Virus record (IMG/VR): IMGVR_UViG_3300018080_008436
Span: 124,001-188,000 of that record
DNA: 64,000 nt
Strand: one strand, 5' to 3'
Below are positions 1 through 18,857 of the stretch, piece after piece (position 1 is the stretch's first letter; each line of letters opens with the position of its first letter). The notes beneath the pieces were generated by a model. It searched no databases. It saw only the letters and a program-made list of their open reading frames with translations, and was not told the origin of the DNA. Both the position numbers and the translations under genes were made by a program.

Positions 1-1869
1 TCCACGATTTACACGACCTGCCATCTGAAGGACACTTCGGTATGATGGTTCTTCTCGGAAACCATAACGGAAGGAGAGGTCAAGTCCGATATCAGAACCA
101 TCTGTTGCAACCAGAATCACATCTTCTCCGTCATTCAATGCTTCACTTACTCTTCTGTATTGCTCTTGTTTGTCGCTATGATTTACTGAAGAGTGTCTAA
201 CAAAAACACTCTTGTCAGTATTCTCTTTCAAAAACTTTGCGAACTCAACTGTTCTAAGAACCGTTGACATTACAACAAAAACACTTCCTTCTTTTTGAAT
301 GATAGCATCTGTCAAACTCTGAAATGACTGCTCCCTCCTATAGAGAGTGTGATAATCGTATTTCACCCTGTCACTTTCTAAAGTCAACATCTGATTGTAC
401 AATGAATCTGATAATACATTAACAATCTCCCAGGTCTTATCAGACAAAAGACTTCGTGTTTGCAAATCTTCCAATTCCCAATAAGAGGGGGGAGATCCTG
501 ATCCAAGAACAAATTTAGACCCGAATAAACAACCTAAGTCATAAAGAAGATCATAGATAAGCCCCCAATGTTGCAATTCAGCACAACGGTCATATTCATC
601 AAAAACAATTACAGCACCAACAATCTTATGAAAATTTCTTATAACTGACGGTGAGTTTGATGTGAAAATATCGAAAAACGTTTTACTAGTCGCAATGTTG
701 ATTGGAGCAGTAACCCCTTTGGCATAGATCTTATTGGTGTACCTTTCATAATCAAACAAAGAGTGGATCGCATTTATCTCTTTATCCTTATCCTCCATGA
801 AAACTAAATCATCCAAACTACCATAACTCTGATCAACCAACGCTATGTAGGGAATATTAATTATGAGTTTATTTAGACCACTTTTCTCTGCTATTTTAAG
901 AGCCAAAGGGATATAAGAGAATGTTTTCCCTGATCCGACCAAACCTTTCACCAGATAAAACATATCTTGTGGATCGGGTTCAAAAGCATTAACTTCTTCC
1001 CTCATCTTATTTCTAAGGTCATTTCGCCTCTTTACAAAAGGCTTGTCTTCGACTCGAAGATCTTTTGTTTTTTGTCCAAGAACTTCATCTAACTTTGTGT
1101 TGAAACTCTTAAGCCTTTCTTCTGGCTTAAGATCGTGAGTTTGAACTGGGTAGTAAGATTTATAGTTCTCAGACGTATCCTTATGATCAGCATCTATCAA
1201 CAAAGAAAGAAGAAACCTAAACATGAGAAATGACTTCAACGTAGTGTCAACAATCTTATTGTTAACGGGAACGTGTTCGAACTTAAAATATTTCTCATGC
1301 TTATAAGAATATGACTTCATATATGTGTCAACATGATCTCTTACTCTTGAGTTTCCCATCATGTATTTCGCCATACTAGAGTCATCCCTTAACGAATCTA
1401 GATCGTAAGAGAACCGTGGACGAAACCTAGACATATCTATTTGAACTACCGAAGAGAAATCATCGAATCCTATGTGGTGGGCGAGGACGATAAATGCCGC
1501 CATGATATATTGGGACTCATTGTATTTATCATAACAGTTAATCAAGAAAGCACAACCAGCATCAACATGGTTAATCATTCTTTGCTTTGTATGTCCATCC
1601 CTGGATGCATCTGGAGGGGTTCTAAGTACCCTCTGGCATTGATCGTCCAACTTTCCCATGTCATGATAGGTACAAGCCAAACTAAGGATATTCTCCATGG
1701 CAGAATACGTCTCTTCGTCTACATTAAGATACTGCTTTTTCTCAGCGAGTAGCTTCAATGCATAAGATCTAACACCATTTACATGGTCCTGATAGGACTG
1801 TGCGGGGATGATTATTTCATCCCCGTAGTGTTTCTTATATTCAGCAGAATGAGCCAAAAGAGGGTTCAT
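1..1869 (-). CDS. cas3: Cas3-like HD nuclease + SF2 helicase (3' end beyond window; absent from ORF track)
   Basis: Hand translation from ATG at 1869: MNPLLAHSAEYKKHYGDEIIIPAQSYQDHVNGV..YHDMGK..NHVDAG..AHHIG..LIDADH (Cas3 HD motifs), then GLVGSGKT (Walker A), FDEYD (Walker B), VATDGSDIGLDL (motif V-like), QMAGRVNRG (motif VI). Frame is open to position 1. Start overlaps the upstream stop (ATGA). Confidence 0.92.
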   Translation of the reverse strand, partial: MNPLLAHSAEYKKHYGDEIIIPAQSYQDHVNGVRSYALKLLAEKKQYLNVDEETYSAMENILSLACTYHDMGKLDDQCQRVLRTPPDASRDGHTKQRMINHVDAGCAFLINCYDKYNESQYIMAAFIVLAHHIGFDDFSSVVQIDMSRFRPRFSYDLDSLRDDSSMAKYMMGNSRVRDHVDTYMKSYSYKHEKYFKFEHVPVNNKIVDTTLKSFLMFRFLLSLLIDADHKDTSENYKSYYPVQTHDLKPEERLKSFNTKLDEVLGQKTKDLRVEDKPFVKRRNDLRNKMREEVNAFEPDPQDMFYLVKGLVGSGKTFSYIPLALKIAEKSGLNKLIINIPYIALVDQSYGSLDDLVFMEDKDKEINAIHSLFDYERYTNKIYAKGVTAPINIATSKTFFDIFTSNSPSVIRNFHKIVGAVIVFDEYDRCAELQHWGLIYDLLYDLGCLFGSKFVLGSGSPPSYWELEDLQTRSLLSDKTWEIVNVLSDSLYNQMLTLESDRVKYDYHTLYRREQSFQSLTDAIIQKEGSVFVVMSTVLRTVEFAKFLKENTDKSVFVRHSSVNHSDKQEQYRRVSEALNDGEDVILVATDGSDIGLDLSFRYGFREEPSYRSVLQMAGRVNRG

Positions 1870-4800
1870 TTGATGTCTTGTTCTTCTACCGTTAACTTGA
1901 TGTGGTTACATCTCAGTTCTTTTGAGACCCATTTCTTTTTCTTAGGCGAGTAATATACAGAAGTGTTTCTGAATGGAACTTTCTCTCCATCGACCAGAAT
2001 CTTCTTTCCATCGATATCGAGTTTTTTGCCATCAATTAATCTCTCAACTTCTAGCTCACCATGATCCCCCATTTTCAAAACAGCATCTTTCTTAGATTTC
2101 CCACCAACATCTTCCAAGAACTTTTTATAGAAACGCTTCCTATTATCACTGGAAACATTTCTCTTTTGCAAAATGTAGACAGTTGATTGGTCTTCAACAA
2201 CAACACCGCTTAACGTTTGGATAAGATCCCGATCAAAGAACCTTTCCCCTATGTTCTTTGAAGCATTGATGTCAGCATCAATAGACTTAATTTTACCATT
2301 GCGGACAACGTACAGTCTTCCCCCTTTCCTGTATCCTATATCTTTAGTTTCATTATCAAGCTGAGAGGTCAGGTATGGAGAAACGTACTGAACTACAACT
2401 CTGTGCTTCTCTGCTTTCTCTTCAATGCGTTTTTTGAGTTCCCCACTCCCCCACAAACTCTGGATCGCATTCTTGTCCTTTTCTCTATATTTCGAGACAG
2501 ACGAATCAAGATCTTCAAGGATGATCATATGAGCACCAAGATCAAGGGCATTATTCACAATGGCAGAAGACAAATAGGTCAGGACATTTCTTCGAAGGCC
2601 ATTAATATAATCCCAGATCTTCTTTCCATAAATCTGATCTGTCTTCACAACTCGAACTGTACCAATCGAAGACCATGACTTCATTAAAGAAAGAAGTGCT
2701 TTCGCAAACTTAATCTTATGAAATGTTTTCTGGGTAACGACTTGTGTCTTTTTTCCCCTGATATTGTCAAGATTTTCCCTCTTAATTCTTGACATAATAG
2801 CCTTCGCTTCCTGAATCAGAGGGGGAACAAATTGTGCGTTACTGGTCTTCCATTTCAAAAGTGAGATGTTCAAAATGTCATCTTGATTTCCTTCTACATC
2901 TTCGGGAAGATGGCTTAAAATCTTGACAACGTAGGGATCGTCTTCGTCAAGAACTTTGATCCCATCAATATCATCAACAAAATCTTTCGCACTAATTTTG
3001 TCAATATGATCTGCATAGGTATCAACATAATAATTGATTTGTTGGATGCAATTATGAAAAGATTGAACGGCCTTACGGCTTGCGATATCTAATTTTCCGA
3101 TATTGCCTAACCCAACAGTATTCCCATTCTCATTCAGGACACCAATAAACTGCCTTTTGAGTTCAGGGTCATCAATGATACTCTTTTTAACAACTGGGAT
3201 TAACTTCACTATCTTTTTTAAGTTGAGAACAAAATAATAACCTTGGTCCATCTCAGAACTCTCAGATTTTGAGCGCAGACTTCCACTTGTAAGGTATTTA
3301 TACCCACCCAATACTCCGTCTTTATAAGAGAAATCAAAAGATGACCATGCCCCTACATTACGAATACCCAAATCATATGCAACCGCTCTACAGTTATTAT
3401 CTGAGATATTCAACTTACTAGGGCTTTTTGCAACATGGTTATAGACGAACTTCCTCAGATTCGAGAGAAATTCCCCTTGTTTTCCGAATTTACCATTCAA
3501 AGGGCTGACATCTGATAACTGGAAAGCAATTTCCCACTTCTTTGTCTTTCTATTAAAAAAGATTCTTGGCTCTTTTGATTTGGCAATAAATCTCGCCTTA
3601 CCACCCGTAGAATAAGAAATAGTGTAATTGTTATCTTTTCGATTCGGATTTCCACTTAAAATTTCCAAATCACTCAGATACTTGTTATTACAAACAACGA
3701 AGTGGACTTCCTTACCTGATAACGGATTATCGAACTTAATTACCAAACCTTCTCCTTCTATACTCATCGAGTAATTAAGATAATTTCCGCCAAGAAGAAT
3801 AGAAGTGCTGTTCTGGAATGTTGATACGTTAATGGAGTTTTTCCCCCAGTGATAACTTTCCTCAACAACCTTTGCGAATGTCCTCTTCCCATCGTGATCT
3901 TTACACAATTTGTAAAACTGCTTTTTATTATTAAAAAGAAACTGCATGAGGGTAACATCCAACCCATACATAAACTGTTCACTTTGGGAAAAGGTGTGAT
4001 TAGGATCAAGAGACTCAAAATAATCATGAATTGAAGGGGTTTTGTCCCCTCGCTTCCCAAATTCTTTATCGAGTTTCTTGACAATAGTTTTGAACGTTCT
4101 GAGTTTCATCTTCTCAATTGGTCCATATTTAGACTCAATCATATCCTCGACAAAGAGAACAAAATCACTATCTTGTTCATAAAGCTTTACACGTTCAGCT
4201 TCCCAACAATTCTTCGACTTTTGATATTCTTCAGAGGTCTCTTCAAATGATTTAAGCTTCCCCGATACATTCCCAACGATTACATATTTGAAGTCAGAAG
4301 ATTCTGACCAACCTATGTCAAACCACAGATAGCCGCTATCTCTTAACTCTTTGTGCGCTTTATATTCAGCAGAACTTATCTCTTTCTTCTTATCCCCAAA
4401 AAAATAGGTCCCAAAACCTCTCGTCTTTTTCTTCTTGGAAAACTTATTGTAGAAGAATCTGCACTTTTTAGCGAAGTCCTCAAAATCTTCAAAATATTCC
4501 TTGTGCTCTTCGTAGTCTGCTTTCAATTGTCTCTGCACTTCTTCTTTTGAAATCTTTTCTCCGTCAATTGACAGTTCTTCCCCCTTCATATATAAAATAC
4601 GAATCAGCAAAGTGTTACTGAGGTCTTGAACCTTCTCGGATATATCTGACAGAGCCTTTCTCAGGCCACCAGAATGTATATTAAATGCACTAATGCTAAT
4701 AGCTCTTGTTAAGGACCTATCTTCATATCGATCCATCATACAGCAACTAAAATCAAGTAGCCCCTTTTTATCTATAGAGTAGTCTGCTTTCTGAATCATA

Positions 4801-5225
4801 TTTTTAAGGGCTGGGAAGAAATCTTCGACTAATGAACCGTTTACACTCATCGAGATAAGTTCATTTAACTTATCAAGATTCTCCTGAGTTGGGTCAGATA
4901 AAAGTTGAGCATAGGCATCCTGTTGCGCCATCACTCCCTGGTAATACTCCTGATACTCTTTCTTTTTCTGAGCCTTCTTTTCTGCACTGCTCATGTTCTT
5001 TCTGACATTTTTTGCCTTGAAATTTTTCTCCCCCTTTACCCTTGAAAAACAAATGAACATAGAGTCCAAAAATTTAGAGGCATAAGACACTAAACTTGGA
5101 TCAACTCCAATATCTGAAAACCCATTTCTCAGTCTTTCTTGAATTTTATTTTTTGTGACAATACCATCATCTTCAAAGAGGTATTCTGACTTCATTAATT
5201 TAACCATTTCGTTGATGTTCATCAT
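1866..5225 (-). CDS. cas12: Type V CRISPR effector-like RuvC nuclease (Cas12-like, 1119 aa)
   Basis: C-terminal split RuvC: AVAYDLGIRN (RuvC-I D), IILEDL (RuvC-II E), VSPYLTSQ, IDADINASKNI (RuvC-III D). Far larger than TnpB. By recollection the C-terminal half most resembles Cas12h/Cas12b-like proteins; subtype not established. Confidence 0.85.
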   Translation of the reverse strand: MMNINEMVKLMKSEYLFEDDGIVTKNKIQERLRNGFSDIGVDPSLVSYASKFLDSMFICFSRVKGEKNFKAKNVRKNMSSAEKKAQKKKEYQEYYQGVMAQQDAYAQLLSDPTQENLDKLNELISMSVNGSLVEDFFPALKNMIQKADYSIDKKGLLDFSCCMMDRYEDRSLTRAISISAFNIHSGGLRKALSDISEKVQDLSNTLLIRILYMKGEELSIDGEKISKEEVQRQLKADYEEHKEYFEDFEDFAKKCRFFYNKFSKKKKTRGFGTYFFGDKKKEISSAEYKAHKELRDSGYLWFDIGWSESSDFKYVIVGNVSGKLKSFEETSEEYQKSKNCWEAERVKLYEQDSDFVLFVEDMIESKYGPIEKMKLRTFKTIVKKLDKEFGKRGDKTPSIHDYFESLDPNHTFSQSEQFMYGLDVTLMQFLFNNKKQFYKLCKDHDGKRTFAKVVEESYHWGKNSINVSTFQNSTSILLGGNYLNYSMSIEGEGLVIKFDNPLSGKEVHFVVCNNKYLSDLEILSGNPNRKDNNYTISYSTGGKARFIAKSKEPRIFFNRKTKKWEIAFQLSDVSPLNGKFGKQGEFLSNLRKFVYNHVAKSPSKLNISDNNCRAVAYDLGIRNVGAWSSFDFSYKDGVLGGYKYLTSGSLRSKSESSEMDQGYYFVLNLKKIVKLIPVVKKSIIDDPELKRQFIGVLNENGNTVGLGNIGKLDIASRKAVQSFHNCIQQINYYVDTYADHIDKISAKDFVDDIDGIKVLDEDDPYVVKILSHLPEDVEGNQDDILNISLLKWKTSNAQFVPPLIQEAKAIMSRIKRENLDNIRGKKTQVVTQKTFHKIKFAKALLSLMKSWSSIGTVRVVKTDQIYGKKIWDYINGLRRNVLTYLSSAIVNNALDLGAHMIILEDLDSSVSKYREKDKNAIQSLWGSGELKKRIEEKAEKHRVVVQYVSPYLTSQLDNETKDIGYRKGGRLYVVRNGKIKSIDADINASKNIGERFFDRDLIQTLSGVVVEDQSTVYILQKRNVSSDNRKRFYKKFLEDVGGKSKKDAVLKMGDHGELEVERLIDGKKLDIDGKKILVDGEKVPFRNTSVYYSPKKKKWVSKELRCNHIKLTVEEQDIK

Positions 5226-5404
5226 TTTGGTTCCTTTAGTTTTTTAGTTTCACAAATAGAACGAGCAGGACAGGTTGAGCAACGAGGAATCCCGAAAGGG
5301 ATATCTTCTTTATAACAATTGTAGAAACCAACTGGTTCCCCTAAGAGACGAATCTTCACCTTCTCCCCTGGCTTAGGTTCCCAAAATTTGAATTCTTTTC
5401 TCAT
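5222..5404 (-). CDS. 60-aa Cys-rich protein (Cx2Cx5C), coupled to cas12-like gene
   Basis: ORF track; PRCSTCPARSIC motif; stop overlaps the cas12 start. Confidence 0.6.
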   Translation of the reverse strand: MRKEFKFWEPKPGEKVKIRLLGEPVGFYNCYKEDIPFGIPRCSTCPARSICETKKLKEPK

Positions 5405-5709
5405 ATCTGGTTCACCTTAACAGATACTTTCTTAGTGACCTCAACCGCCCCAGAACTCTTGAAAGCGACATAGCTCGGATAGCTTTTCTTTTCTTCTTCT
5501 TCGATTTCTTTCAGCCACTCATCCTCGTCAGTAAAATAACGGTAATCAAAACAAGTTTCATAATGAGCGGGATACCCATGACCTGGATTGGTACGAGATC
5601 TTTCATCACCTGGAATGCGAATGTTCCTCTGAGTCATGATTACCCAATGAGGTTCTTTAGGAATCTCTTTCAGATCATGAACATAGGTGGTTTTCGACTT
5701 GTAACTCAT
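5401..5709 (-). CDS. Hypothetical phage protein
   Basis: ORF track; overlaps both neighbours in a coupled run. Confidence 0.7.
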   Translation of the reverse strand: MSYKSKTTYVHDLKEIPKEPHWVIMTQRNIRIPGDERSRTNPGHGYPAHYETCFDYRYFTDEDEWLKEIEEEEKKSYPSYVAFKSSGAVEVTKKVSVKVNQI

Positions 5710-6263
5710 TATCTTTCCTCTTCTTCCATTTCTTTGTAGTTATAATCACATGCATCCATGAACTCTTTGCAAGTGAGTTTTTTCTGAAAATACTTTGGAT
5801 TCATGATCTTCCAAGAGCCTCCGCTTTCCCCTCCAACCCATTCAGAGACCTTCTTGGCGATCTCTTTGATCGTTCTATAGGGTCCATGAATGCCTCTATG
5901 ATCATTGAAAGCGTTCTCGAAATGATACCACTTCCCACTCTCTTTAAAAATGAGAAATGTATGAGTGCCAATTCCATACTGCTGGACGAAAATCATCCTA
6001 CTTGGTATTTCCATCTGATCAAACACATGTTTGGCAAAAACAGTTTGGTCCCAACAGGTCCCCAATCGATGTGTGTACACTTCATGAGGAAGAAGCATTG
6101 AATATTTTTCCCAGAAACGCCCCCCAGTACTCGTGTATTCGTTGTAATCTGAGTCCATCCAACCATAGTCAATTTTTTTCATCCACTTCAGTAAATGATG
6201 AGGGTTTTCGAACTTCTTGATCTTTTTGGGCTTCTTGGTCTTAGAAGTAGTGTACCAACTCAT
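5709..6263 (-). CDS. Transglutaminase-like/papain-fold protein
   Basis: GTCWDQT ... THTFL ... HFEN gives a plausible Cys-His-acid triad. Confidence 0.6.
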   Translation of the reverse strand: MSWYTTSKTKKPKKIKKFENPHHLLKWMKKIDYGWMDSDYNEYTSTGGRFWEKYSMLLPHEVYTHRLGTCWDQTVFAKHVFDQMEIPSRMIFVQQYGIGTHTFLIFKESGKWYHFENAFNDHRGIHGPYRTIKEIAKKVSEWVGGESGGSWKIMNPKYFQKKLTCKEFMDACDYNYKEMEEEER

Positions 6264-6272
6264 ACTTTACTC

Positions 6273-7070
6273 CTATGCAAGAACTTTTACGGAATCACTG
6301 ACCTGCATCCCCTTTGCAGTCATTTCATCGACAAAGCCATCCCCCAAGAACTCCAGAGTTGGAACATTGGAACAAAGATCTTCAAGAAGATAAATCTTCT
6401 GAGCGAAGTCGTCCCCCAACTCATAAACGATGTCGCGTACTGTATTGGCTACGCAATGGCTCAAAGCCTCTCCTGCAACCAACAGCATATCAGCACGATT
6501 CAGCACTTCCAAAAAGAATCTATTGGGAAGAGTGTTTCTGTCCAACGGATCTGGAACTTCTGCTTTGATGGCCGAATAATGTTCGGTATAGGGGTTCTCC
6601 CCCTTGAAGATGTAATTGATCCCCTTGTGGTGATCTTTGCTCAACTTGCGCAAAGCATCAGATACTCTCTTCTCAATCTGAAACCCTTCAGTTCCAGCGA
6701 TACAATGAGGTGGCCAAATGGTCAAAGGATATCGTCCGTTTTCCTCAAGTTCCTTCACATACTGTTCAGCCCAAAGAGCGTCCCGAGTATCTGCCACAGT
6801 ATACAGACCATCCTCCAATACCTTCCTTGTGATAGACGTAAGAGGATTAGGTTCATTCCCTTTGCCATCCTTCCAAAAAACGGGATGAGCAATATCATAC
6901 TCATTATGGCAGTCCATTGTCACATGAGTATGAGTGAATTTATGGCCATGCAGGGCCAGGAATTTGGCGAGACGAACACAGTCTTGGTCTGCGCCTCTAA
7001 CATAGAGTGCTCCTTCGGGATCGCAGAAATCGTTCTGTGGGTCAATGATCAACAGTTGTAGGTTTGGCAT
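6273..7070 (-). CDS. pncA: Nicotinamidase (isochorismatase family)
   Basis: IIDPQNDFC, TMDCH, WPPHC, KG..EHYSA, GEALSHCV motifs. Confidence 0.85.
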   Translation of the reverse strand: MPNLQLLIIDPQNDFCDPEGALYVRGADQDCVRLAKFLALHGHKFTHTHVTMDCHNEYDIAHPVFWKDGKGNEPNPLTSITRKVLEDGLYTVADTRDALWAEQYVKELEENGRYPLTIWPPHCIAGTEGFQIEKRVSDALRKLSKDHHKGINYIFKGENPYTEHYSAIKAEVPDPLDRNTLPNRFFLEVLNRADMLLVAGEALSHCVANTVRDIVYELGDDFAQKIYLLEDLCSNVPTLEFLGDGFVDEMTAKGMQVSDSVKVLA

Positions 7071-7102
7071 AGTTTTCTCCTATTGCTACGTTGTTAGTAC
7101 AT

Positions 7103-7130
7103 AAAAAAGGACTACTATTATAGTAGCCCT
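7103..7130 (-). terminator. Intrinsic terminator overlapping the next promoter
   Basis: Minus strand AGGGCTACTA-TAA-TAGTAGTCCT followed by a T-run. Confidence 0.7.
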
Positions 7131-7147
7131 TAAAATTAATTTGTCAA
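7120..7147 (-). promoter_or_regulatory. Class I promoter TTGACA-N16-TACTAT (upstream of pncA and the cas12-cas3 run)
   Basis: One of nine intergenic CTTGnnn-N16-TAnnnT sites. Confidence 0.7.
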
Positions 7148-7172
7148 GTTGTTCTTAGTAAAAAACTTCGCC

Positions 7173-7859
7173 TTATTTATAAGGCGTTATAGGTAGGTAT
7201 TCGTCCTCCGTCCCTGGTGCAATTACAGCCCCTTTGAACGGCCTATCCAATACGAACTTCCCGTCAACAAATTTACCATATCCAGCTTGTTCGAACTGCT
7301 TAAACACTTCCATTTTTGCTTGTCTGGCAATAGCCGTCTTCTCAGCATTTGATAGTGCAACCTTCTCTACAACATTTGTTACGTTAGGCATAGGTTTTAC
7401 AGGTTCAACGTTTGATGGTTTTGACAATTCAATTAGTGAGTTATTGACAACGGTCTTAAGCTTTTCAGCCCATTTCTCGAAGTCTTGTTCGGTTACTTTC
7501 TCTTTCTCCAGTTCTTCGATCTGCGTAAGAATCAAATTAATCCTGTTCTCAACGTTTGTCAGATCAGCAGGAGTAGGTTCTTCAGGTTCAACTTTAATTG
7601 GGTCCATCTTTTCAAGATTGTCCACTCTTTCTTCGAGCTTCCCATTTGCATCTTGTAACCCAGTTAGTGCTTCCAACAACTCAAGATTACTTGAGGCCAA
7701 TTCATCATTCTGATAAATCAACTGTTGGATTTGGATCTTGTCCCCCTCATTCAAAGCCTGAATCATTTCTTTCTGTTTGAGAGTGATTGACAGGCAGTAC
7801 GCAACGACAGCTACCAGGACAACCCCAGTAATCAATTCTAGCCATTCTTTCCCTTTCAT
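7173..7859 (-). CDS. Membrane-anchored coiled-coil protein
   Basis: N-terminal hydrophobic helix followed by heptad-rich sequence. Confidence 0.7.
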   Translation of the reverse strand: MKGKEWLELITGVVLVAVVAYCLSITLKQKEMIQALNEGDKIQIQQLIYQNDELASSNLELLEALTGLQDANGKLEERVDNLEKMDPIKVEPEEPTPADLTNVENRINLILTQIEELEKEKVTEQDFEKWAEKLKTVVNNSLIELSKPSNVEPVKPMPNVTNVVEKVALSNAEKTAIARQAKMEVFKQFEQAGYGKFVDGKFVLDRPFKGAVIAPGTEDEYLPITPYK

Positions 7860-7905
7860 GGTGATACCTCCGTTACTCTAGTAACATTATAACTATGATA
7901 TCACC

Positions 7906-7933
7906 TAGTTCAAGACTTGTTTCCGAAAATCCT
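7906..7933 (-). promoter_or_regulatory. Class III (SigH-like) promoter AGG-N19-GAACTA
   Basis: Same spacing recurs at 11641-11668(-), 41421-41445(+) and 44840-44867(+). Confidence 0.45.
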
Positions 7934-7934
7934 T

Positions 7935-8912
7935 TCAGAAAAGCTCGGCTGGCATGTCAGATTCTTGAAAATAACGCAGGCCCTTGGTTGTGATTTCTCG
8001 GCCCTTACTAGAATTTTTGATGAGGTTAAGTTCCTTAAGTCGAACTTCTAACTCAGACTTAATGTTATTCTCATTCACCATTAATATGAGCGCAAGGCTC
8101 GAACAGGAAATGGGACCGTGATCCTTGATGATCCGAAGAAGCTTGACCTCTTCACTAGTAAGACCTCGCCATTGTATATCAAAGATGTTTTTGATGTCTT
8201 CCCAATCTTTGGTTGTTATAGTGTTGAGCTTGTTCAGATTGGCGTAACGTTTGATATTCTGGGCCAACTGATAAGCATTTCTAGCCCTTGATCGACATGC
8301 ATCGGAAAGTTCCTGGTGAGAACATGCCAATTGGGTGTAACCAAGATACAATTGCAGAATGGCAATCAAATCCTTCTGCTCATATGGAGAGAAATAGACT
8401 GAATAACATCGATTCCGCAACGGACGAAACATCATATGGGCATCAGTCGTTGCGAAGATGAGGTTAACAAACCGCAAATCGTAAACGAACTCGACACCCA
8501 TATGAGAAAACGTATTTCTATGGTCTGCTGTTGGATTCAGCAGGGTCAACAGGATGGTAGTCATCTCACTATTCAACTGATGGGATTCATCAAAGAAAAT
8601 AGTGGTAGGAGAATGGATCTGGGAGATAACATCTTTGAAGAAGTCGTCCCGTTTCTTAATCATACCACTGTTAACGGCAATAAATTTCCTACCCAAAGAT
8701 TTAGCTAACTTCTCTGCCAGGAAAGTCTTTCCCAACCCATGAGATCCTGTAAGCAAGACGGTTGGGAAAGGGGTTTCCAGAGAGTGAGACTGAACGAAGA
8801 ATTTCATCTTCTTAATGACGGTTTCCTGCCCAATATAGTTGTCCAGATAACTACTTCTCGTAACTGTCTGAGGTTTCTTCTGGGCTATGTCGATTTTTGT
8901 AGCCATTGACAT
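7935..8912 (-). CDS. ruvB: RuvB-like AAA+ ATPase (Holliday junction branch migration helicase homolog)
   Basis: YIGQE, GSHGLGKT, FFDESH, ATTD, PLRNR and a C-terminal winged-helix (GREITTKG). Confidence 0.8.
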   Translation of the reverse strand: MSMATKIDIAQKKPQTVTRSSYLDNYIGQETVIKKMKFFVQSHSLETPFPTVLLTGSHGLGKTFLAEKLAKSLGRKFIAVNSGMIKKRDDFFKDVISQIHSPTTIFFDESHQLNSEMTTILLTLLNPTADHRNTFSHMGVEFVYDLRFVNLIFATTDAHMMFRPLRNRCYSVYFSPYEQKDLIAILQLYLGYTQLACSHQELSDACRSRARNAYQLAQNIKRYANLNKLNTITTKDWEDIKNIFDIQWRGLTSEEVKLLRIIKDHGPISCSSLALILMVNENNIKSELEVRLKELNLIKNSSKGREITTKGLRYFQESDMPAELF

Positions 8913-8955
8913 CTCTCCTTATTCTACGAATACAGTAGCATATAAAAAGGATTTG

Positions 8956-9786
8956 TCAAGGTAGAATCTCGTCTTCTTGAAGATTTTTTCTGAAAAGCTT
9001 CTTTTGAATCTTTTTCGTCTCTTGCACTCGAATCTGACGAATTCTCTCTGCGCTAACATTATATTTATCTGCCAAGTCCTGTAGACGGACCTTGTCTTCC
9101 TCATATTTGGAAAGAACGATCTCACGAATTCTTGGATCAAGTTCGTAGAGAATCTCTCGTAAGTACGACAACAGGTCTTCCTTCTCCACATCATCATATG
9201 GAGTAGAATTATCATCTGGAATCAAATCCTCCAACATAGAGGAATCATCACCAGAACCTTGTCGCTTTTGCAGAGAAACTGTGTTGACGCTTTTTGCCCT
9301 TTCAAGCTTCTGCATCTTCTCTTCTGAGAACTCAAGTTTCTCTTTGATCTCTTCCCTATCCATCTCTCCATCTGATTCACGAATAGCGGTCTGGATCTTG
9401 ATTAATCCGTCATGAATGCTTTGAGGAATTGCAACAGGGCAACTTTCTTGGATATGACGAATCATTTCAAGCTTAATCCAGTATCCACAGTAAGTGGTGA
9501 ACTTGCAGTTCTTCTCAAGTTCAAATTTCTCGATAGCAGTCATCATACCGATTACACCTGCTCCAATCATGTCATCCATATCTACTTGACACTTCTTGCA
9601 GTAGTAATTGGCCATTTGGGATACGAACCTAATGTGGCTTCTAACAATCTTCTCAATAGCACTATCTTTCTGTGCTTGGGTGTAATCTTCTCCTTTGATG
9701 ATGGAGAAGAGTTCTCTTTCCTCTTTCAGGGAGATATTTGGAATAGAAACTGAGTTTAGGTACTTATCTGCATCCCAATTCTGCAT
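8956..9786 (-). CDS. Sigma-70 family factor (RpoH/RpoD-like, regions 2-4)
   Basis: DDMIGAGVIGMMTAIEKF, KFTTYCGYWI, VSAERIRQI. Confidence 0.9.
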   Translation of the reverse strand: MQNWDADKYLNSVSIPNISLKEERELFSIIKGEDYTQAQKDSAIEKIVRSHIRFVSQMANYYCKKCQVDMDDMIGAGVIGMMTAIEKFELEKNCKFTTYCGYWIKLEMIRHIQESCPVAIPQSIHDGLIKIQTAIRESDGEMDREEIKEKLEFSEEKMQKLERAKSVNTVSLQKRQGSGDDSSMLEDLIPDDNSTPYDDVEKEDLLSYLREILYELDPRIREIVLSKYEEDKVRLQDLADKYNVSAERIRQIRVQETKKIQKKLFRKNLQEDEILP

Positions 9787-9809
9787 AGGGCCACCTCACT
9801 ATTTAAGTC

Positions 9810-10139
9810 TTATTCAATTGAACCAGTTATCAGGTCAATATCCAGATCATCAACATCTGGTTCTTCTGTAGATACCTCTACAGAAGAAACAATCAATGGA
9901 CCATCAGGATCTGGTCTTTCCATGACTACAGGCTCAAATGTTCCATTCGCCCATGATTGCATCGCTTGAACCATCTCACTTAATTCAAACTGATCATTCG
10001 CTATTACTGATATAGTGCCTCTAGTATAAGATACTGGCAATCCAGCCCTTGCATTCGGCCTCATTATATGTTCAACATCTATTAACGTGACTTCCAATAC
10101 CCTATACTCCCCTAAGAGACTGTATAGACTATTATACAA
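9810..10139 (-). CDS. Hypothetical protein (true start probably internal)
   Basis: ORF track; a GTATAAT motif lies at the annotated start. Confidence 0.5.
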   Translation of the reverse strand: MYNSLYSLLGEYRVLEVTLIDVEHIMRPNARAGLPVSYTRGTISVIANDQFELSEMVQAMQSWANGTFEPVVMERPDPDGPLIVSSVEVSTEEPDVDDLDIDLITGSIE

Positions 10140-10661
10140 TTACCATGGCAGTTCGTCTGATTGTTCTGACCTTTTGTCAAAAAGGTCATAGACTGTCACT
10201 TGGATACCTTTGTCGATCAACTCTTCTTTCAAAATCTTCTCGACCTCTTCCCATTTGCCACCTGCCAAGTCACATCCCATAAGATACGGGAAATGAGCAG
10301 TTGCGTTGTAATGCTTGCAAACTTTACGAATGAATGCACAACCTTCTCGCAGTGCCCAGTATCGAACAGGGGGAACGCCGTTCTGTTCCTTCAATCCATG
10401 CTGACCGATAATGTTAGCAACAACAATGTCATCCTCAACAGCAACAAACTGGACTTTTCCACAAGTGAACTCCTGGTTATTGTGGGAATTAGTTTTGTGC
10501 CAACCAACATAATCAGATCGAACTTTGGGCCATTTGTCCAACAGAGCTTTGGCAACTCCGCTTCCCATTCGGCCCAAATCATTGCAACAATGTCCAATAA
10601 TCTTACGTCCTTCGCCTTGGGGGTTTCTGACATCGCCTCTGCTGATGTATTCAATTTCCAT
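10140..10661 (-). CDS. Macrodomain ADP-ribose-processing protein (TARG1/DarG-like)
   Basis: GDV..IIGHCCNDLGRMGSGVA..PYLMGCDLAGGKW. Confidence 0.85.
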   Translation of the reverse strand: MEIEYISRGDVRNPQGEGRKIIGHCCNDLGRMGSGVAKALLDKWPKVRSDYVGWHKTNSHNNQEFTCGKVQFVAVEDDIVVANIIGQHGLKEQNGVPPVRYWALREGCAFIRKVCKHYNATAHFPYLMGCDLAGGKWEEVEKILKEELIDKGIQVTVYDLFDKRSEQSDELPW

Positions 10662-10752
10662 TGCGTCCTCCTTATAGGTTCTCGTTATAAGTAAGGTAAA
10701 CGCTATATGGATATTGTCAAGCTGTATATCGAAATTTAATCGAAGTTGTCGA

Positions 10753-11610
10753 TTAAGTGAACATTCTCTTCTTGAGGTTATCCTTTTTCCCTTCCAATTG
10801 AGGGGTTTGTGGATATTGTCTTGAAGGAAGTTTCTTTCTCAAAAGCTTGTAGAAGTCATTGTAAGTAAGCTCTGGCTTGCTTCTAATGATCGCAACGGCA
10901 TTCGCAGTCATAGCTCCCTGGAATTTCCCACCAATTCTAGCGTCATAGCTATATTGAGTTGGATTACACCCAGTGATAAGAACTTCTTTCATCTTTTCAG
11001 GTGAGAAGACTTTCTTAGAAACTGACTTAGGAGCGATCTCAAATACTTCTTCATCATCTTCAGGTGGAAGATATCTTGGTTTAGGAGCGTTCTCATCATA
11101 AAGAGTACTCAAAAACGATCTAGTTACTGTTCCTGAATGACATGAGTCAGAAATGAAAGTAAGACTTGCCCCTTCTGGCAATCCGCCTAAGATCTCTCTC
11201 AACTGGTCATCAATCAAAAGTTTGTCATACAAACAAAGAGCTTCGTCTCTTTTGTCAGCTTCGTCTCCACTAACATCTCTGACATTAGTTCCATGTCCTG
11301 AGAAAGTGATGACAACATGACTGTCTGCGGTTGCGTTCTCAACAATCTTTTTCATCTCTCTGACAACATTCTTGTAAGTGGCCTTCTGGTCAAGAAGTTT
11401 GGTCGTTGTGAAGCCATAAAGTTCTTTTAACAATGCTTCCCATGAATTAGCATCGTTAACACAACCTCTAAGATCATTTCTTCTTCCTGGGTAATCATTG
11501 ATTCCAATGTGAAGAGATTGTTTGCAACCTTTCCCCTCACAAACCCTTTCTGTTTTTTTTGTAAAGATTTCAATAAATTTTCTCATGAATTTCCAATCCC
11601 ATAATTTCAT
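10753..11610 (-). CDS. Metacaspase / caspase-like peptidase C14
   Basis: IGINDYPG..LRGCVNDA, FSGHG (catalytic His), ISDSCHSG (catalytic Cys), QTPQL. Confidence 0.9.
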   Translation of the reverse strand: MKLWDWKFMRKFIEIFTKKTERVCEGKGCKQSLHIGINDYPGRRNDLRGCVNDANSWEALLKELYGFTTTKLLDQKATYKNVVREMKKIVENATADSHVVITFSGHGTNVRDVSGDEADKRDEALCLYDKLLIDDQLREILGGLPEGASLTFISDSCHSGTVTRSFLSTLYDENAPKPRYLPPEDDEEVFEIAPKSVSKKVFSPEKMKEVLITGCNPTQYSYDARIGGKFQGAMTANAVAIIRSKPELTYNDFYKLLRKKLPSRQYPQTPQLEGKKDNLKKRMFT

Positions 11611-11672
11611 AATACACCTCCATAGGCAAATCTACGGAGATATTTCTAAAAATAATTAATGAATACCTGCCT

Positions 11673-12359
11673 TTAGATCTCGGTTACATCGCCCTTAGCA
11701 ACAACTCTGGCAAGCCGACCGCAATAGCCCCCATGATGCCTCTTGGCATACTCATCTGGAGTTAATCCACATTTTTCTGAAGCAATAATTGCCAAGCAGT
11801 CTGTGATGGCCAACATAACAAGAATACTGGTTGTAGGTGCGATACCCATCTCTCCAATTTCGTTGATCTCCCCCATGTCCAAGCAAACATCTACTTCATC
11901 CCGAATCGGGCTGTCTTCATGTGAAGTAATTCCAATGAACTTTCTTACTCCAAGATTTTTGGCTAACTTGATTGTTTCAAGTACTTCTCTGGTTTTCCCA
12001 GAAGTCGATGCGACAAACAACACATCATTAAATCCAAGGATACCAAGATCCCCATGAGAAGCTTCTCCTGGGTGTAAGTAACAGGAAGAGAACCCTAAGG
12101 AACAAAGAGTTGAGGAAAACTTCCTCATCGCTACTCCTGCCTTTCCCATACCTGTTGTGACTATTTTGTAGTCTTCTTCTGAAGTTGTCGCGAAACTAGA
12201 ATTCGCAATCAAATCTATGGCGTGAATAAAATTCTCATCTAGTTGAATATTAGCTATTGCTTCGGAAAGAGTAACTAGGTATTGATTACCTTTACTAACC
12301 TCACCATTCAACTCCACCCTCACATTCCTCGTCCTCTCCTTCTCCATCATCTCCATCAT
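11673..12359 (-). CDS. SIS-domain arabinose-5-phosphate isomerase-like protein (KdsD/KpsF/GutQ family, no CBS domains)
   Basis: TGMGKAG, HPGEASHGDLG, STSGKT.E, APTTS, HHGG. Confidence 0.8.
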   Translation of the reverse strand: MMEMMEKERTRNVRVELNGEVSKGNQYLVTLSEAIANIQLDENFIHAIDLIANSSFATTSEEDYKIVTTGMGKAGVAMRKFSSTLCSLGFSSCYLHPGEASHGDLGILGFNDVLFVASTSGKTREVLETIKLAKNLGVRKFIGITSHEDSPIRDEVDVCLDMGEINEIGEMGIAPTTSILVMLAITDCLAIIASEKCGLTPDEYAKRHHGGYCGRLARVVAKGDVTEI

Positions 12360-16828: not shown

Positions 16829-16970
16829 CTATCTGAAACCATTTACTCCCTTGACTGATGGACAATCCGTGTTTCCTATCTGCCAAATGACACTTTCCTC
16901 CTTTGAATTCCCCATGCTCACAACCTTCCATAATATTACTCAACTCCATAAGCTTTCTTGACTCTTTCAA
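16740..16970 (-). CDS. Small Cys-rich hypothetical protein
   Basis: CEH..CH..CPIC. Confidence 0.5.
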   Translation of the reverse strand: MKESRKLMELSNIMEGCEHGEFKGGKCHLADRKHGLSISQGSKWFQIVEASGVCPICDKPVRGYETWKKIGKVLGP

Positions 16971-18120
16971 CCATGTCTGGATCGCCCATAGTCTTACCTA
17001 AATCATCTGACAGCTTGACCAGAGGCTTGCCGTTACAACTCATGAGCTTCATAACGACATTCAGAGGCTTTCTACCTACGTCATTCGACAAGTTAGTACC
17101 AATCCCGAACGCAACCCCAACTCGACCTGCAAAATGCTTCCAGATGTTGATTGCTTTACTTACATTCAAGCTGTCAGAGAAGATGATCGATTTCCTTTTG
17201 GGGTCAATACCAACACTCTCATAATGAGCAATCATATCGTTACCAAATTTAATAGGATCTCCACTATCCTGCCTGACTCCATCATAAGCCCTGGCAACTG
17301 GGAATGTGAAGTCATTGAAGAAAGCCTTCGTTGTGAAAGTATCAGTCAAAGCGATACCAAGAGCCTGTCCATACTCCTGTTGCCATACATACAATGCCCT
17401 GCTTTGAGCCTGATCTATACGATCAACCAAACCAAGATGACTCATCGTCCATTCATGTGCAACAGTCCCGATTGGCTTAATTCCATACTTCATGGCAAGA
17501 TAGACGTTTGAAGTCCCAATCATATTTCTTGGGCATTTGTCCACCAAAGTGCAAACTTCCTCTTCCTGCCAATCTCTGGAATATCTTCTTCTGGTGCCGA
17601 ACTCAGCGAAAATGAGATTTGGGTAGTCACGGATTTGACTTATCTTATTTTCCAGTCTTTCCCTTCCATCACGAAGGATCATATCCAAATCAAGTTCGAA
17701 GATATCTCGTTCAAATTCGAAATACAACTCGTTCACAATAGAAAGGATGTAAACTTCCAGAATGTTGACAAAAACCAAGCTCCCTTTCGCTCGGATGATG
17801 ATATCACCATTTCCATCATCGTCAACAGTAACCCCAGCAATACCTGGAACAAATCTGCTTTGAAACCACTCAAGAAAGTCTTCCTTAAAATATCCGAGAC
17901 TTTTGAGATATTCTCTCTCTTCATCACTCAAACGAAGATTTTTCAGATTGTCAATCTGTAGCTTAACATTCTTTTTTAAATGCCCAAGTTTTACCTCTTT
18001 ATCACGATTACGAAACTCCCAATGCCCATACGCAGTCGGGTACTGATGATAGTAAGCCTGGAGCATCGAAAGTTTGTAAAGGTCAGTATCCAAAACACTT
18101 GTGATAATTGGATCGTTCAT
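16936..18120 (-). CDS. pncB: Nicotinate phosphoribosyltransferase
   Basis: LDTDLYKLSM, EFGTRRR, GTSNV, GTVAHEW, DTFTT, GVRQDSGDP, FSDSLN, FGIGT, KLSD. Confidence 0.92.
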   Translation of the reverse strand: MNDPIITSVLDTDLYKLSMLQAYYHQYPTAYGHWEFRNRDKEVKLGHLKKNVKLQIDNLKNLRLSDEEREYLKSLGYFKEDFLEWFQSRFVPGIAGVTVDDDGNGDIIIRAKGSLVFVNILEVYILSIVNELYFEFERDIFELDLDMILRDGRERLENKISQIRDYPNLIFAEFGTRRRYSRDWQEEEVCTLVDKCPRNMIGTSNVYLAMKYGIKPIGTVAHEWTMSHLGLVDRIDQAQSRALYVWQQEYGQALGIALTDTFTTKAFFNDFTFPVARAYDGVRQDSGDPIKFGNDMIAHYESVGIDPKRKSIIFSDSLNVSKAINIWKHFAGRVGVAFGIGTNLSNDVGRKPLNVVMKLMSCNGKPLVKLSDDLGKTMGDPDMVERVKKAYGVE

Positions 18121-18641: not shown

Positions 18642-18857
18642 CTAACCTGTAACTTTGTAATTCTTTATCTCTCCACAGTTCGAACACTGGAGGACATAAA
18701 TCTTTCCCACCCTATGTCCTTCATAACCTATATCAAGGGTTTCTTTCGTTTCCCACTCATGACTACAAACTGCTGGTACATGTCTGGCTAAACCGCATTT
18801 TTCACAGTATTGGTAACCACGCTCATCAATTTTACCATATTTGTGGAAACAAAACAT
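18642..18857 (-). CDS. Small zinc-ribbon protein
   Basis: CFH..CEKC..CSH..CSNC. Confidence 0.6.
   Translation of the reverse strand: MFCFHKYGKIDERGYQYCEKCGLARHVPAVCSHEWETKETLDIGYEGHRVGKIYVLQCSNCGEIKNYKVTG

What the first reader, a model, noticed from the sequence alone, without database searches (positions are those of the whole stretch)
1..5225. Phage-encoded hybrid: Cas12-like RuvC effector translationally coupled to Cas3
Seen: a 1119-aa protein with all three RuvC acidic residues ends in a TGA that overlaps the ATG of a >=623-aa HD+SF2 helicase with Cas3 motifs, which the ORF track does not show. No cas5/7/8, cas1/2 or repeats lie upstream in the window. Established: Cas3 is the type I signature nuclease recruited by Cascade, whereas Cas12 effectors normally act alone. 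Inference: a class 1/class 2 chimera in which the Cas12 R-loop or cut loads Cas3 for processive degradation of host or competitor DNA, on a jumbo-phage-like genome. I cannot tell whether this exact pairing has been catalogued in large surveys.
Basis: partly seen in the sequence, partly recalled or inferred. Interest (0 to 1): 0.9.

Follow-up and report, generated by a model that had tools for sequence, protein, structure and literature searches.

The report
Phage Cas12–Cas3 hybrid CRISPR system
A giant phage carries a CRISPR locus in which a single-protein Cas12 effector of the Cas12o1/Cas12X family is genetically welded to a Cas3 shredder and a 26-repeat array; the pairing is real and conserved in about a dozen phage lineages, was already catalogued as a candidate in 2023, and I found no paper in the library searched that tests how it works.

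Summary
Window 1866-5225 (-) encodes a 1119-aa Cas12 with an intact RuvC triad (D618/E904/D985). Its TGA overlaps the ATG of a Cas3 (HD nuclease plus SF2 helicase, all motifs intact). Cas3 is 820 aa in full, and 623 aa of it lie in the window. The window comes from a 476-524 kb phage contig.

Just left of the window, about 215 bp after cas3, lies a CRISPR array of 26 36-nt repeats. There are no Cascade genes in 72.6 kb and no adaptation genes within ±10 kb of cas12.

The effector belongs to the solved Cas12o1/Cas12X family, an autonomous nuclease with a 36-nt-repeat crRNA, and is not Cas12m.

The Cas12-Cas3 link is conserved:
- It occurs in 12 divergent metagenomic or viral lineages, in three gene orders.
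- On a Cas3 tree, one 99%-supported branch separates the Cas12-linked Cas3s from 57 type I-C-variant (cas5-cas8-cas7-cas3) relatives.
- Divergence of the two proteins is correlated (Mantel r = 0.91).
- The clade is absent from 185,579 species genomes.

Most likely the Cas12-crRNA complex finds the target and Cas3 degrades it processively. This is inferred, not shown.

A "Cas12-Cas3" candidate was listed by Altae-Tran et al. 2023, so this is a new variant of a known kind.

The parts
1866..5225 (-). cas12 gene: a 1119-aa type V effector, a distant member of the Cas12o1/Cas12X family. RuvC-I D618 (3372-3374), RuvC-II E904 (2514-2516), RuvC-III D985 (2271-2273). The TNB/Nuc region is about aa 928-992.
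1..1869 (-). cas3 gene, first 623 of 820 codons; the rest lies left of window position 1 (L001 13357-15819). HD nuclease motif H69-D70 (1660-1665), Walker A GSGKT (922-936), DE (595-600), motif VI QMAGRVNR (4-27).
1866..1869 (-). ATGA overlap of the cas12 stop codon and the cas3 start codon (translational coupling).
   Evidence: The same kind of abutting junction is seen in the homologous locus L005, where the called cas12 gene ends and cas3 starts at base 3792.
5222..6263 (-). Three small ORFs (184, 102 and 60 aa) whose stops overlap the next start (TAATG, ATGA, ATGA), running into cas12. They have no family hits and are not found in other Cas12-Cas3 loci. They are probably co-transcribed, but no evidence makes them part of the system.

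Best explanation
This is one three-part CRISPR-Cas system of a giant phage: cas12 (Cas12o1/Cas12X family), then cas3 (from the type I-C lineage), then a CRISPR array of 26 36-nt repeats that starts about 215 bp after cas3, just outside the window (L001 16036-17812).

Proposed working, with status:
1. The array is transcribed in the cas direction. Supported by a degenerate distal repeat and by G-U pairs that are tolerated only on that strand.
2. Each 36-nt repeat folds into a two-helix hairpin that Cas12 binds as the crRNA handle. The fold is shown by covariation. Binding is inferred from Cas12o1, whose crRNA keeps the full 36-nt repeat.
3. Cas12-crRNA recognises a PAM-flanked dsDNA target and opens an R-loop (inferred).
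4. Cas3, made in step with Cas12 through the overlapping stop/start, is loaded at the R-loop and degrades the target processively with its HD nuclease and SF2 helicase. Cas12 thus takes the place that Cascade (Cas5-Cas8-Cas7) holds in the sister systems (inferred from genomic evidence).
5. Whether the intact Cas12 RuvC site also cuts the target, or mainly matures crRNA, is open.

The system has no adaptation genes, so the spacer set is probably inherited or recombined rather than newly acquired.
For: Anatomy.

Both enzymes look active. The RuvC triad is intact here and in every Cas3-linked relative examined. The Cas3 HD and helicase motifs are invariant in the clade.

Conserved linkage:
- Every Cas3 with at least 32% identity to this one whose contig reaches far enough has a homologous Cas12 next to it (10 contigs). 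Four are cut off, and none has Cascade.
- L018/L085, L031 and L181/L182 are also linked.
- Three gene orders occur: cas12-cas3-array, cas3-cas12-array and cas3-array-cas12.

Cas3 tree: a branch with 99% SH-aLRT support separates 57 rows of the Cascade-linked group (53 with Cascade seen) from 15 rows of the Cas12 group (11 with Cas12 seen, 4 cut off). In the Cascade-linked loci cas3 follows cas5-cas8-cas7, the position that cas12 occupies here.

Pairwise identities of Cas12 and Cas3 across 9 loci correlate: Mantel r = 0.91, p = 2e-4.

No Cascade genes were found in 72.6 kb of this genome or in any linked locus.

Repeat fold: 13 pairs are 89.9% paired, against 25-41% for slid controls, and 10 pairs show compensatory changes across 11 loci.

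Family precedent: Cas12o1 is an RNA-guided dsDNA nuclease that uses a 36-nt repeat crRNA without tracrRNA (PMC13717751, PMC12721324). No anti-repeat was found here.

Altae-Tran 2023 showed crRNA co-purifying with the Cas12 of their Cas12-Cas3 locus.
Against: There is no direct evidence of a Cas12-Cas3 contact or of Cas3-dependent interference.

The family includes members that work alone. Cas12o1 itself (L179) and a 1093-aa relative on another 507-kb phage contig (L183) have an array but no adjacent cas3. Cas3 is therefore not required by the fold.

No large Cas12-specific insertion marks the linked Cas3s. Only three segments of 6-8 residues differ.

Correlated divergence could reflect shared phage ancestry rather than co-adaptation.

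No protospacer, PAM or transcript was found. Only DNA runs hold the locus.

The array is identical in three assemblies, so there is no sign of ongoing adaptation.
Confidence: 0.62

Rival explanations
1. Cas12 as a nuclease-silent 'single-protein Cascade'. The RuvC site only matures pre-crRNA, as in Cas12c and Cas12m, and all target destruction is done by the recruited Cas3. This shares Cas3 recruitment with the best explanation and differs only in whether Cas12 cuts the target.
For: Intact RuvC triads are known in DNase-free Cas12c and Cas12m, which use binding only (PMC12669027). Altae-Tran 2023 proposed exactly this logic for their Cas12-Cas3 locus. Cas12 sits where Cascade sits in the sister systems.
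Against: The closest characterised relative, Cas12o1, cleaves dsDNA and edits genomes on its own. The triad is conserved in every linked member examined, which fits either role.
Confidence: 0.22
2. The partners are functionally independent. Cas12 plus the array is a complete type V system, and the neighbouring Cas3 serves another purpose, for example working with a host type I-C Cascade, degrading host DNA, or general phage DNA metabolism.
For: Standalone family members exist (L179, L183). The locus sits beside a replication and repair module. The nearest non-Cas12 relatives of this Cas3 are type I-C-variant Cas3s, which are widespread in cellular genomes.
Against: A Cas3 that merely served host Cascades would not be expected to show any of the following:
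- Adjacency kept across about 12 lineages at 15-36% Cas12 identity and through three gene orders.
- A dedicated Cas3 clade that is never seen with Cascade and never seen in 185,579 species genomes.
- A stop/start overlap with cas12.
- Correlated divergence with its Cas12 partner.
Confidence: 0.1
3. Chance neighbours or a decaying remnant: a type I-C locus that lost Cascade happens to lie beside an unrelated type V locus.
For: There are no adaptation genes. Some spacers are truncated (17-28 nt) or duplicated, and the repeat variants are mosaic, so the array looks recombined rather than actively growing.
Against: All catalytic motifs of both proteins are intact, both ORFs are full length, and the same pair recurs in many independent contigs with no Cascade remnant in any of them.
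Confidence: 0.03

Closest known systems
'Cas12-Cas3' putative class 1-2 hybrid of Altae-Tran et al. 2023 (Science; PMC10910872; 7 loci, representative IMG 3300020641 Ga0206884_1077)
   Same: A Cas12 effector next to a type I-C-like Cas3 and a CRISPR array, with no Cascade. The proposed logic is that Cas12 targets and Cas3 supplies interference. Their Cas12 co-purified with crRNA.
   Different: Their effector is described as a Cas12m of about 743 aa. This one is 1119 aa, and its family profile matches Cas12o1/Cas12X at 4e-131 but a Cas12m only at 5e-9, in the RuvC core. No protein of about 743 aa appears among its 123 relatives. I could not retrieve their contig, so whether the two are one lineage or two independent Cas3 captures is unresolved. 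This locus is on a giant phage.
Cas12o1, alias Cas12j19, CasJ19, Cas12-2 and Cas12X (PDB 8XCA, 8XCC, 8WRU, 8ZQB; Duan et al. 2025 Cell Res)
   Same: Same protein family: full-length profile match at 4e-131, and the best Foldseek hits (TM normalised to the target 0.55-0.72). Both have a 36-nt repeat with the same two-helix fold, no tracrRNA and an intact RuvC triad.
   Different: Cas12o1 is 908 aa, works alone, and its natural locus (L179) has no cas3. The phage protein alone matches it by sequence only over aa 821-1000 (3e-15). It is about 210 aa longer and is coupled to Cas3. The ATG PAM of Cas12o1 cannot be assumed here.
Type I-C variant systems with gene order cas5-cas8-cas7-cas3
   Same: Closest Cas3 relatives outside the Cas12-linked clade (24-29% identity). 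cas3 is the last gene and often overlaps the gene before it. PADLOC calls the phage Cas3 'Cas3c'.
   Different: Those systems have Cascade and no Cas12, and they occur in many bacterial and archaeal MAGs (77 of 80 genome hits have cas7 and cas8). The phage clade has Cas12 in place of Cascade and was not found in cellular genomes.
Huge-phage type V systems such as CasΦ/Cas12j and phage Cas12i (Al-Shayeb et al. 2020, PMC7162821)
   Same: Compact CRISPR loci on giant phages that lack cas1, cas2 and cas4 and sit next to arrays.
   Different: Those effectors act alone. CasΦ gives only a weak structural match (TM normalised to the target about 0.23-0.25).

Membership tests
Type V (Cas12) effector | C-terminal RuvC-like nuclease split into three motifs carrying D, E and D | tested here: met
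   D618, E904 and D985 align with the family. D618 and E904 are invariant and D985 is kept in at least 90% of 48 sequences.
Type V (Cas12) effector | TNB/Nuc domain between RuvC-II and RuvC-III | tested here: met
   Pfam PF07282, 31 bits against a cut-off of 26.3, residues 928-992. It has no zinc-finger cysteines, like Cas12o1.
Type V (Cas12) effector | Encoded next to a CRISPR array | tested here: met
   26 repeats at L001 16036-17812, about 215 bp after cas3, identical in three assemblies. The array is outside the window.
Type V (Cas12) effector | crRNA-guided nucleic-acid targeting by the single protein | not testable with these tools
   Needs biochemistry. Only DNA sequencing runs hold the locus.
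Cas12o1/Cas12X family | Full-length sequence and fold homology to the solved protein | tested here: met
   The family profile that includes this protein matches 8XCC/8ZQB/8WRU over positions 20-894 of 904 at 4e-131. The AlphaFold2 model (pLDDT 74.6) has these entries as top hits. The single sequence matches only aa 821-1000 at 3e-15, so this is a distant member.
Cas12o1/Cas12X family | 36-nt repeat kept as the crRNA handle, no tracrRNA | tested here: inconclusive
   The 36-nt repeat has the same two-helix fold as the repeat of the Cas12o1 locus L179. No anti-repeat was found in 74 kb. The mature crRNA ends are unknown.
Cas12o1/Cas12X family | Autonomous dsDNA cleavage with an ATG PAM | not testable with these tools
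   Reported for Cas12o1 (PMC13717751). No protospacers were found here from which to infer a PAM.
Cas3 (type I signature helicase-nuclease) | N-terminal HD nuclease domain with its metal-binding motifs | tested here: met
   TIGR01596, 50 bits against a cut-off of 43.45. H69, D70, H101, H131, H132, D228 and H229 are invariant in the clade.
Cas3 (type I signature helicase-nuclease) | SF2 helicase core (Walker A, DExD/H, motif VI) and a Cas3 C-terminal domain | tested here: met
   GSGKT 312-316, DE 424-425, QMAGRVNR 615-622. Pfam Cas3-like_C_2 2.5e-14, PADLOC Cas3c 5e-65, PDB Cas3 entries 8ZNS and 8G9U at about 1e-16.
Type I-C CRISPR-Cas system | Cascade genes cas5, cas8c and cas7 in the locus | tested here: not met
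   There are no PADLOC or Pfam Cas hits in the neighbouring genes. Cas5, Cas7 and Cas8 profiles built from the sister systems find nothing in 72.6 kb or in any Cas12-linked locus.
Cas12-Cas3 candidate system (Altae-Tran 2023) | Cas12 plus a type I-C-like Cas3 plus a CRISPR array, without Cascade | tested here: met
Cas12-Cas3 candidate system (Altae-Tran 2023) | Effector of the Cas12m kind, in the same lineage as their 7 loci | tested here: inconclusive
   The family profile hits a Cas12m (23VU) only at 5e-9, against 4e-131 for Cas12o1. Their representative of about 743 aa is not among my 123 relatives or my loci. Their contig could not be fetched.

The most novel reading that the evidence does not exclude
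The Cas3-linked branch of the Cas12o/Cas12X family may be a phage-restricted class 1/class 2 hybrid that is a distinct subtype. It would have arisen by a separate capture of a type I-C-variant Cas3, independent of the Cas12m-Cas3 loci catalogued in 2023. In it, a nuclease-competent single effector physically recruits Cas3, combining a precise cut with long-range shredding.
Probability: 0.3. Interest if true: 0.8.

Novelty: new variant of a known kind. Interest (0 to 1): 0.6.

Why it matters
Cas3 is only known to be recruited by multi-subunit Cascade complexes. If a single Cas12 protein can load it, the boundary between class 1 and class 2 CRISPR systems is crossed by a natural two-protein machine.

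This would bear on two questions: how Cas3 recognises an R-loop, and how effector modules are swapped in evolution.

It would also offer a compact RNA-guided tool for making large deletions. Engineers currently imitate this by fusing exonucleases to Cas12o1 (PMC13717751).

The present locus adds a large, well-preserved, phage-borne example. It comes with about 12 orthologous pairs for comparative and co-folding work, and with solved structures of a family member.

Tried and rejected
- GenBank phages (INPHARED): no protein match to the Cas12. The array gave only chance-level hits (E = 0.5) to Lactobacillus phages.
- The word-indexed protein search found only the protein itself. The exhaustive HMMER search was needed.
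- Repeat search in IMG/VR: only the source contig.
- Spacer targets:
  - No self-match and no anti-repeat in 74 kb.
  - Four spacers searched as exact 22-27-mers in IMG/VR hit only the array itself.
  - No hit in the 1.8 Mb of fetched loci.
- Rfam: no family matches the array region. There are no tRNAs in the window.
- Neighbouring ORFs (184, 102 and 60 aa upstream; 211, 285 and 242 aa downstream) as hidden Cas components: no family hits, and no homologues in 16 other Cas12-Cas3 loci. Rejected as system parts.
- L016/L017: the 908-aa ORF near a phage type I-C locus is unrelated to Cas12. L013 and L014 are loci whose only match to the effector is a weak C-terminal one (28-32% identity) with no array.
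- A Cas12-specific insertion in Cas3 as a docking module: only three segments of 6-8 residues differ.
- Sequencing runs: only DNA metagenomes hold the locus. Contigs break inside the array and show no variants.
- The search for related loci with the broad Cas12 alignment failed because no stretch was conserved enough.
- The Cas12o1 discovery paper (PMC11770080) is not held.
- Searches for the names Cas12X and Cas12j19 found nothing useful.
Full report
**1. What is in the window**

The minus strand of window 1866-5225 carries an ATG-to-TGA ORF of 1119 aa. The sequence at its end reads ATCAAATGAACCCT. The TGA stop (1866-1868) therefore shares bases with an ATG (1867-1869) that opens a reading frame running without a stop to window position 1, 623 codons in all. 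The ORF lister omits this second gene only because it runs off the window.

Upstream, three small ORFs (184, 102 and 60 aa; window 5222-6263) are chained to cas12 by TAATG, ATGA and ATGA overlaps. They have no family hits and no counterparts in related loci.

**2. Identity of the two proteins**

The 1119-aa protein matches the following:
- Pfam Cas12f1-like_TNB, above its cut-off.
- NCBIfam guided_TnpB and Cas12b.
- PADLOC Cas12u3, Cas12f and Cas12b.

All of these hits fall in the last 270 or so residues.

Alignment with 47 relatives places the RuvC triad at D618, E904 and D985. The first two are invariant and the third is kept in at least 90% of sequences.

The downstream protein is a Cas3:
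- PADLOC Cas3c scores 8e-58, and 5e-65 for the full 820 aa.
- TIGR01596 cas3_HD scores above its cut-off.
- The Pfam DEAD and Cas3-like_C_2 domains are present.
- It matches the solved Cas3 structures 8ZNS and 8G9U.

The HD motifs, Walker A (GSGKT), DE and motif VI are invariant among its five closest relatives.

**3. Source and surroundings**

The window is bases 124,001-188,000 of IMG/VR contig IMGVR_UViG_3300018080_008436 (476,248 bp). The identical genes occur on five contigs from JGI and ENA assemblies, the longest about 524 kb. The DNA is held by sediment and seawater metagenome runs. The rest of the window is a phage replication and repair module: DNA polymerase, SbcC-like protein, NAD-dependent ligase, RecJ-like exonuclease, UvsX-like recombinase and a clamp-like protein.

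With the 10-kb flank (locus L001) the missing part becomes visible. cas3 ends at L001 15819. After an AT-rich stretch of about 215 bp, a CRISPR array of 26 repeats and 25 spacers follows at L001 16036-17812. This is 0.8-2.6 kb to the left of window position 1.

The repeat is the 36-mer GGTACAGGCTCAAGAAAAACTTGAGCCAAATGTGAC. The last two copies carry a C-to-T change, which marks the distal end. The array is therefore read in the same direction as the cas genes.

After the array come three ORFs with no hits, a PARP-like gene and two more unknown ORFs. None gives a Cas hit. Profiles of Cas5, Cas7 and Cas8 built from the nearest type I-C-variant systems find nothing in the 72.6 kb I could read. The precomputed Pfam hits within ±10 kb show no cas1, cas2 or cas4.

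There is an array, and no Cascade follows cas3.

**4. Which Cas12 is it?**

An exhaustive HMMER search of 1.84 billion representatives gave 123 relatives. Only one is alignable end to end: P0017, 1137 aa, 29-31% identity. The rest are mostly proteins of 850-1000 aa that share the C-terminal half.

A profile of 48 family members matches the solved protein known as Cas12o1, Cas12j19, CasJ19, Cas12-2 or Cas12X (908 aa; PDB 8XCA, 8XCC, 8WRU, 8ZQB). The match covers essentially the full length at E = 4e-131. Weaker matches follow:
- Cas12X2.
- Cas12h1 at 3e-44.
- Cas12b/C2c1.
- A Cas12m, which appears only at 5e-9 in the RuvC core.

An AlphaFold2 model (mean pLDDT 74.6, pTM 0.64) gives the same ranking by Foldseek. 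The Cas12X, Cas12-2 and Cas12o1 entries come first, with E about 1e-24 to 1e-21 and TM normalised to the target of 0.55-0.72. AacC2c1, Cas12h1 and Cas12i come next.

According to PMC13717751 and PMC12721324, Cas12o1 has these properties:
- It is an active RNA-guided dsDNA endonuclease.
- Its crRNA consists of a 36-nt repeat plus a spacer of 18 nt or more.
- It uses an ATG PAM.
- It needs no tracrRNA.

The phage protein is thus a large, distant member of this family.

**5. The repeat**

Eleven loci of this family have 36-37-nt repeats that differ widely in sequence but keep one architecture: a terminal stem formed by the two ends of the repeat, and an inner 7-8-bp hairpin with an A-rich loop.

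Counting 13 proposed pairs over the 11 repeats gives these results:
- 89.9% of cells form standard pairs, against 25-41% when the partner is slid by 1-3 columns.
- 10 pairs have compensatory double changes.
- 0 of 500 shuffles reach the observed covariation score.

About ten G-U cells would be A-C mismatches on the other strand, which supports transcription in the cas direction. The repeat of the Cas12o1 locus itself (L179) has the same fold.

No anti-repeat was found near the locus, and no Rfam family matches.

**6. Is the Cas12-Cas3 pairing more than adjacency?**

I searched with the Cas3.

*Closest relatives.* P0003-P0006 (32-40% identity) lie on short contigs. Wherever sequence upstream exists, the neighbour is a homologue of the Cas12:
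- L005 has a 1137-aa gene with an abutting stop and start.
- L006 and L007 carry C-terminal fragments.

An array of the same repeat type follows each cas3.

*Metagenome scan.* A scan with a Cas3 alignment returned 80 loci, which I classified with local HMMs:
- Cas3s with at least 32% identity to ours have a Cas12 neighbour of 887-1139 aa in 10 contigs.
- They are cut off by a contig end or by the array in 4 contigs.
- They have Cascade in none.
- Cas3s at 24-29% identity sit in cas5-cas8-cas7-cas3 operons in 53 cases.

There are two exceptions, and both are Cas12-linked. L018/L085 lies on a 124-kb IMG/VR contig with the order cas3, a 1137-aa cas12, then the array. L031 has cas12 on the opposite strand. 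A further pair, L181/L182, was found starting from the Cas12 side.

*Gene order.* Three orders occur: cas12-cas3-array, cas3-cas12-array and cas3-array-cas12. The link has therefore survived rearrangement.

*Cas3 tree.* In a maximum-likelihood tree of 72 Cas3s, a branch with 99% SH-aLRT support separates 57 rows of the Cascade-linked group (53 with Cascade seen) from 15 rows of the Cas12 group. Thirteen of the 15 form a clade with 100% support. The tree is unrooted. It is compatible with a single exchange of partner, but it does not show the direction of that exchange.

*Co-divergence.* Across nine loci with both proteins, pairwise identities of Cas12 and Cas3 correlate (Mantel r = 0.91, permutation p = 2e-4). 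Shared phage ancestry could contribute to this.

*Cellular genomes.* In 185,579 species-representative genomes the best Cas3 match is 28% identical. None of the 80 best loci has a Cas12 neighbour, and 77 have cas7 and cas8.

*Phage setting.* Several linked contigs carry phage genes, such as an RIIB-like protein and a T4-type RNA ligase in L023.

*Catalytic sites.* The RuvC triad is intact in every Cas3-linked Cas12 examined.

**7. Mechanism**

The evidence shows a conserved, co-inherited module of Cas12, Cas3 and an array in which Cas12 occupies the genomic place of Cascade. From this I infer that Cas12-crRNA provides target recognition and R-loop formation. Cas3, produced in step through the overlapping stop and start, would be loaded there and degrade the target processively.

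Two points stay open.

First, does Cas12 also cut? Cas12o1 does. However, Cas12c and Cas12m keep a RuvC site and do not cleave target DNA (PMC12669027), so the triad alone does not decide this.

Second, is Cas3 obligatory? Cas12o1's own locus (L179) and a 1093-aa relative on another 507-kb phage contig (L183) have arrays but no adjacent cas3. The fold therefore works without Cas3, and Cas3 looks like an added module in one branch.

I found no sizeable Cas12-specific insertion in the linked Cas3s. There is no direct evidence of an interaction.

**8. Biology of the array**

The array is identical in three assemblies. It has two duplicated spacers, several short spacers (17-28 nt) and four interleaved variants of the repeat's 3' part. 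With no adaptation genes nearby, it looks like a set that is inherited and reshuffled by recombination.

I found no target for any spacer tested:
- No self-targets in 74 kb.
- Nothing in GenBank phages beyond chance.
- Four spacers searched exactly in IMG/VR hit only the array itself.
- Nothing in the 1.8 Mb of related loci.

Targets and PAM are therefore unknown, and 'host or competitor DNA' remains a guess.

**9. Comparison with what is known, and novelty**

It has. Altae-Tran et al. 2023 (PMC10910872) list 'Cas12-Cas3' among multicomponent Cas12-linked systems. It comprises 7 loci. They describe it as a putative class 1-2 hybrid of a Cas12m with a type I-C-like Cas3, and they show that the Cas12 co-purifies with crRNA.

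It is the only paper in the searched library that uses that term. The 2025 classification (PMC12669027) does not discuss Cas3 together with type V. The accessible papers on Cas12o1 do not mention Cas3.

The present locus differs from the 2023 description in several ways:
- The effector is 1119 aa, against about 743 aa.
- It belongs to the Cas12o1/Cas12X family rather than to Cas12m.
- It sits on a giant phage.

I could not fetch their representative contig, so whether there is one lineage or two is unresolved.

I therefore file this as a new variant of a known, still uncharacterised kind. It passes the membership tests for a type V effector, for Cas3 and for the Cas12-Cas3 architecture. It fails the test for type I-C, because there is no Cascade.

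**10. Verdict**

Interest is moderate to high, at 0.6.

Noticed in passing
L001 16036-17812 (outside the window, 0.8-2.6 kb left of window position 1): The array is a mosaic. Four variants of the repeat's 3' part (CCAAATGTGAC, CTAATTGTGAC, CCAGTTGTGAC, CTAAATGTGAC) alternate in blocks. Two spacers occur twice. Five spacers are only 17-28 nt long. This suggests recombination between arrays rather than ordered acquisition.
   Followed up: partly
L001 20436-21761 (outside the window): A 441-aa protein with WGR, PARP regulatory and PARP catalytic domains (Pfam 1e-27) lies 2.6 kb beyond the array, an unusual gene for a phage. I found no link to the CRISPR module.
   Followed up: no
window 5222-6263 (-): Three small ORFs (184, 102 and 60 aa) are translationally chained into cas12. 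The 60-aa one is cysteine-rich (C..C..CSTC..C). They have no family hits and are not conserved in other Cas12-Cas3 loci.
   Followed up: partly
window 7935-12359 (-): Several cell-like genes sit next to the CRISPR locus: a RuvB-like AAA+ protein (7935-8912), a sigma-70-like factor (8956-9786), a caspase-like Peptidase_C14 (10753-11610) and a SIS-domain protein (11673-12359). A nicotinamide phosphoribosyltransferase-like gene lies at 16936-18120.
   Followed up: no
L023 11010-11254 and L027 5130-5345: The leaders in front of the arrays of two related Cas12-Cas3 loci share repeated GGTTCGCGA / TCGCGAACC motifs. These may be a binding site for a regulator. The motif is not seen in the leader of the window's phage.
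   Followed up: no
L183 (ENA ERZ27297473, 507-kb contig), gene 6001-9282: Another giant-phage contig carries a 1093-aa member of the same Cas12 family followed by an array of at least 13 repeats, with no cas3. It is a natural comparison for what Cas3 adds.
   Followed up: partly
L009-L011, L016-L017, L032-L178: A type I-C variant with gene order cas5-cas8-cas7-cas3 is widespread in MAGs of many phyla and in some phages and mobile elements. L009, for example, lies beside a relaxase gene.
   Followed up: partly
window 18867-19075 and 41881-41925: There are imperfect 48-51-nt tandem repeats inside the ORF at 18857-19489, and an exact 18-nt direct repeat (AAACCCTGCGGATGGTGG) spaced 27 nt apart at 41881 and 41908.
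   Followed up: no
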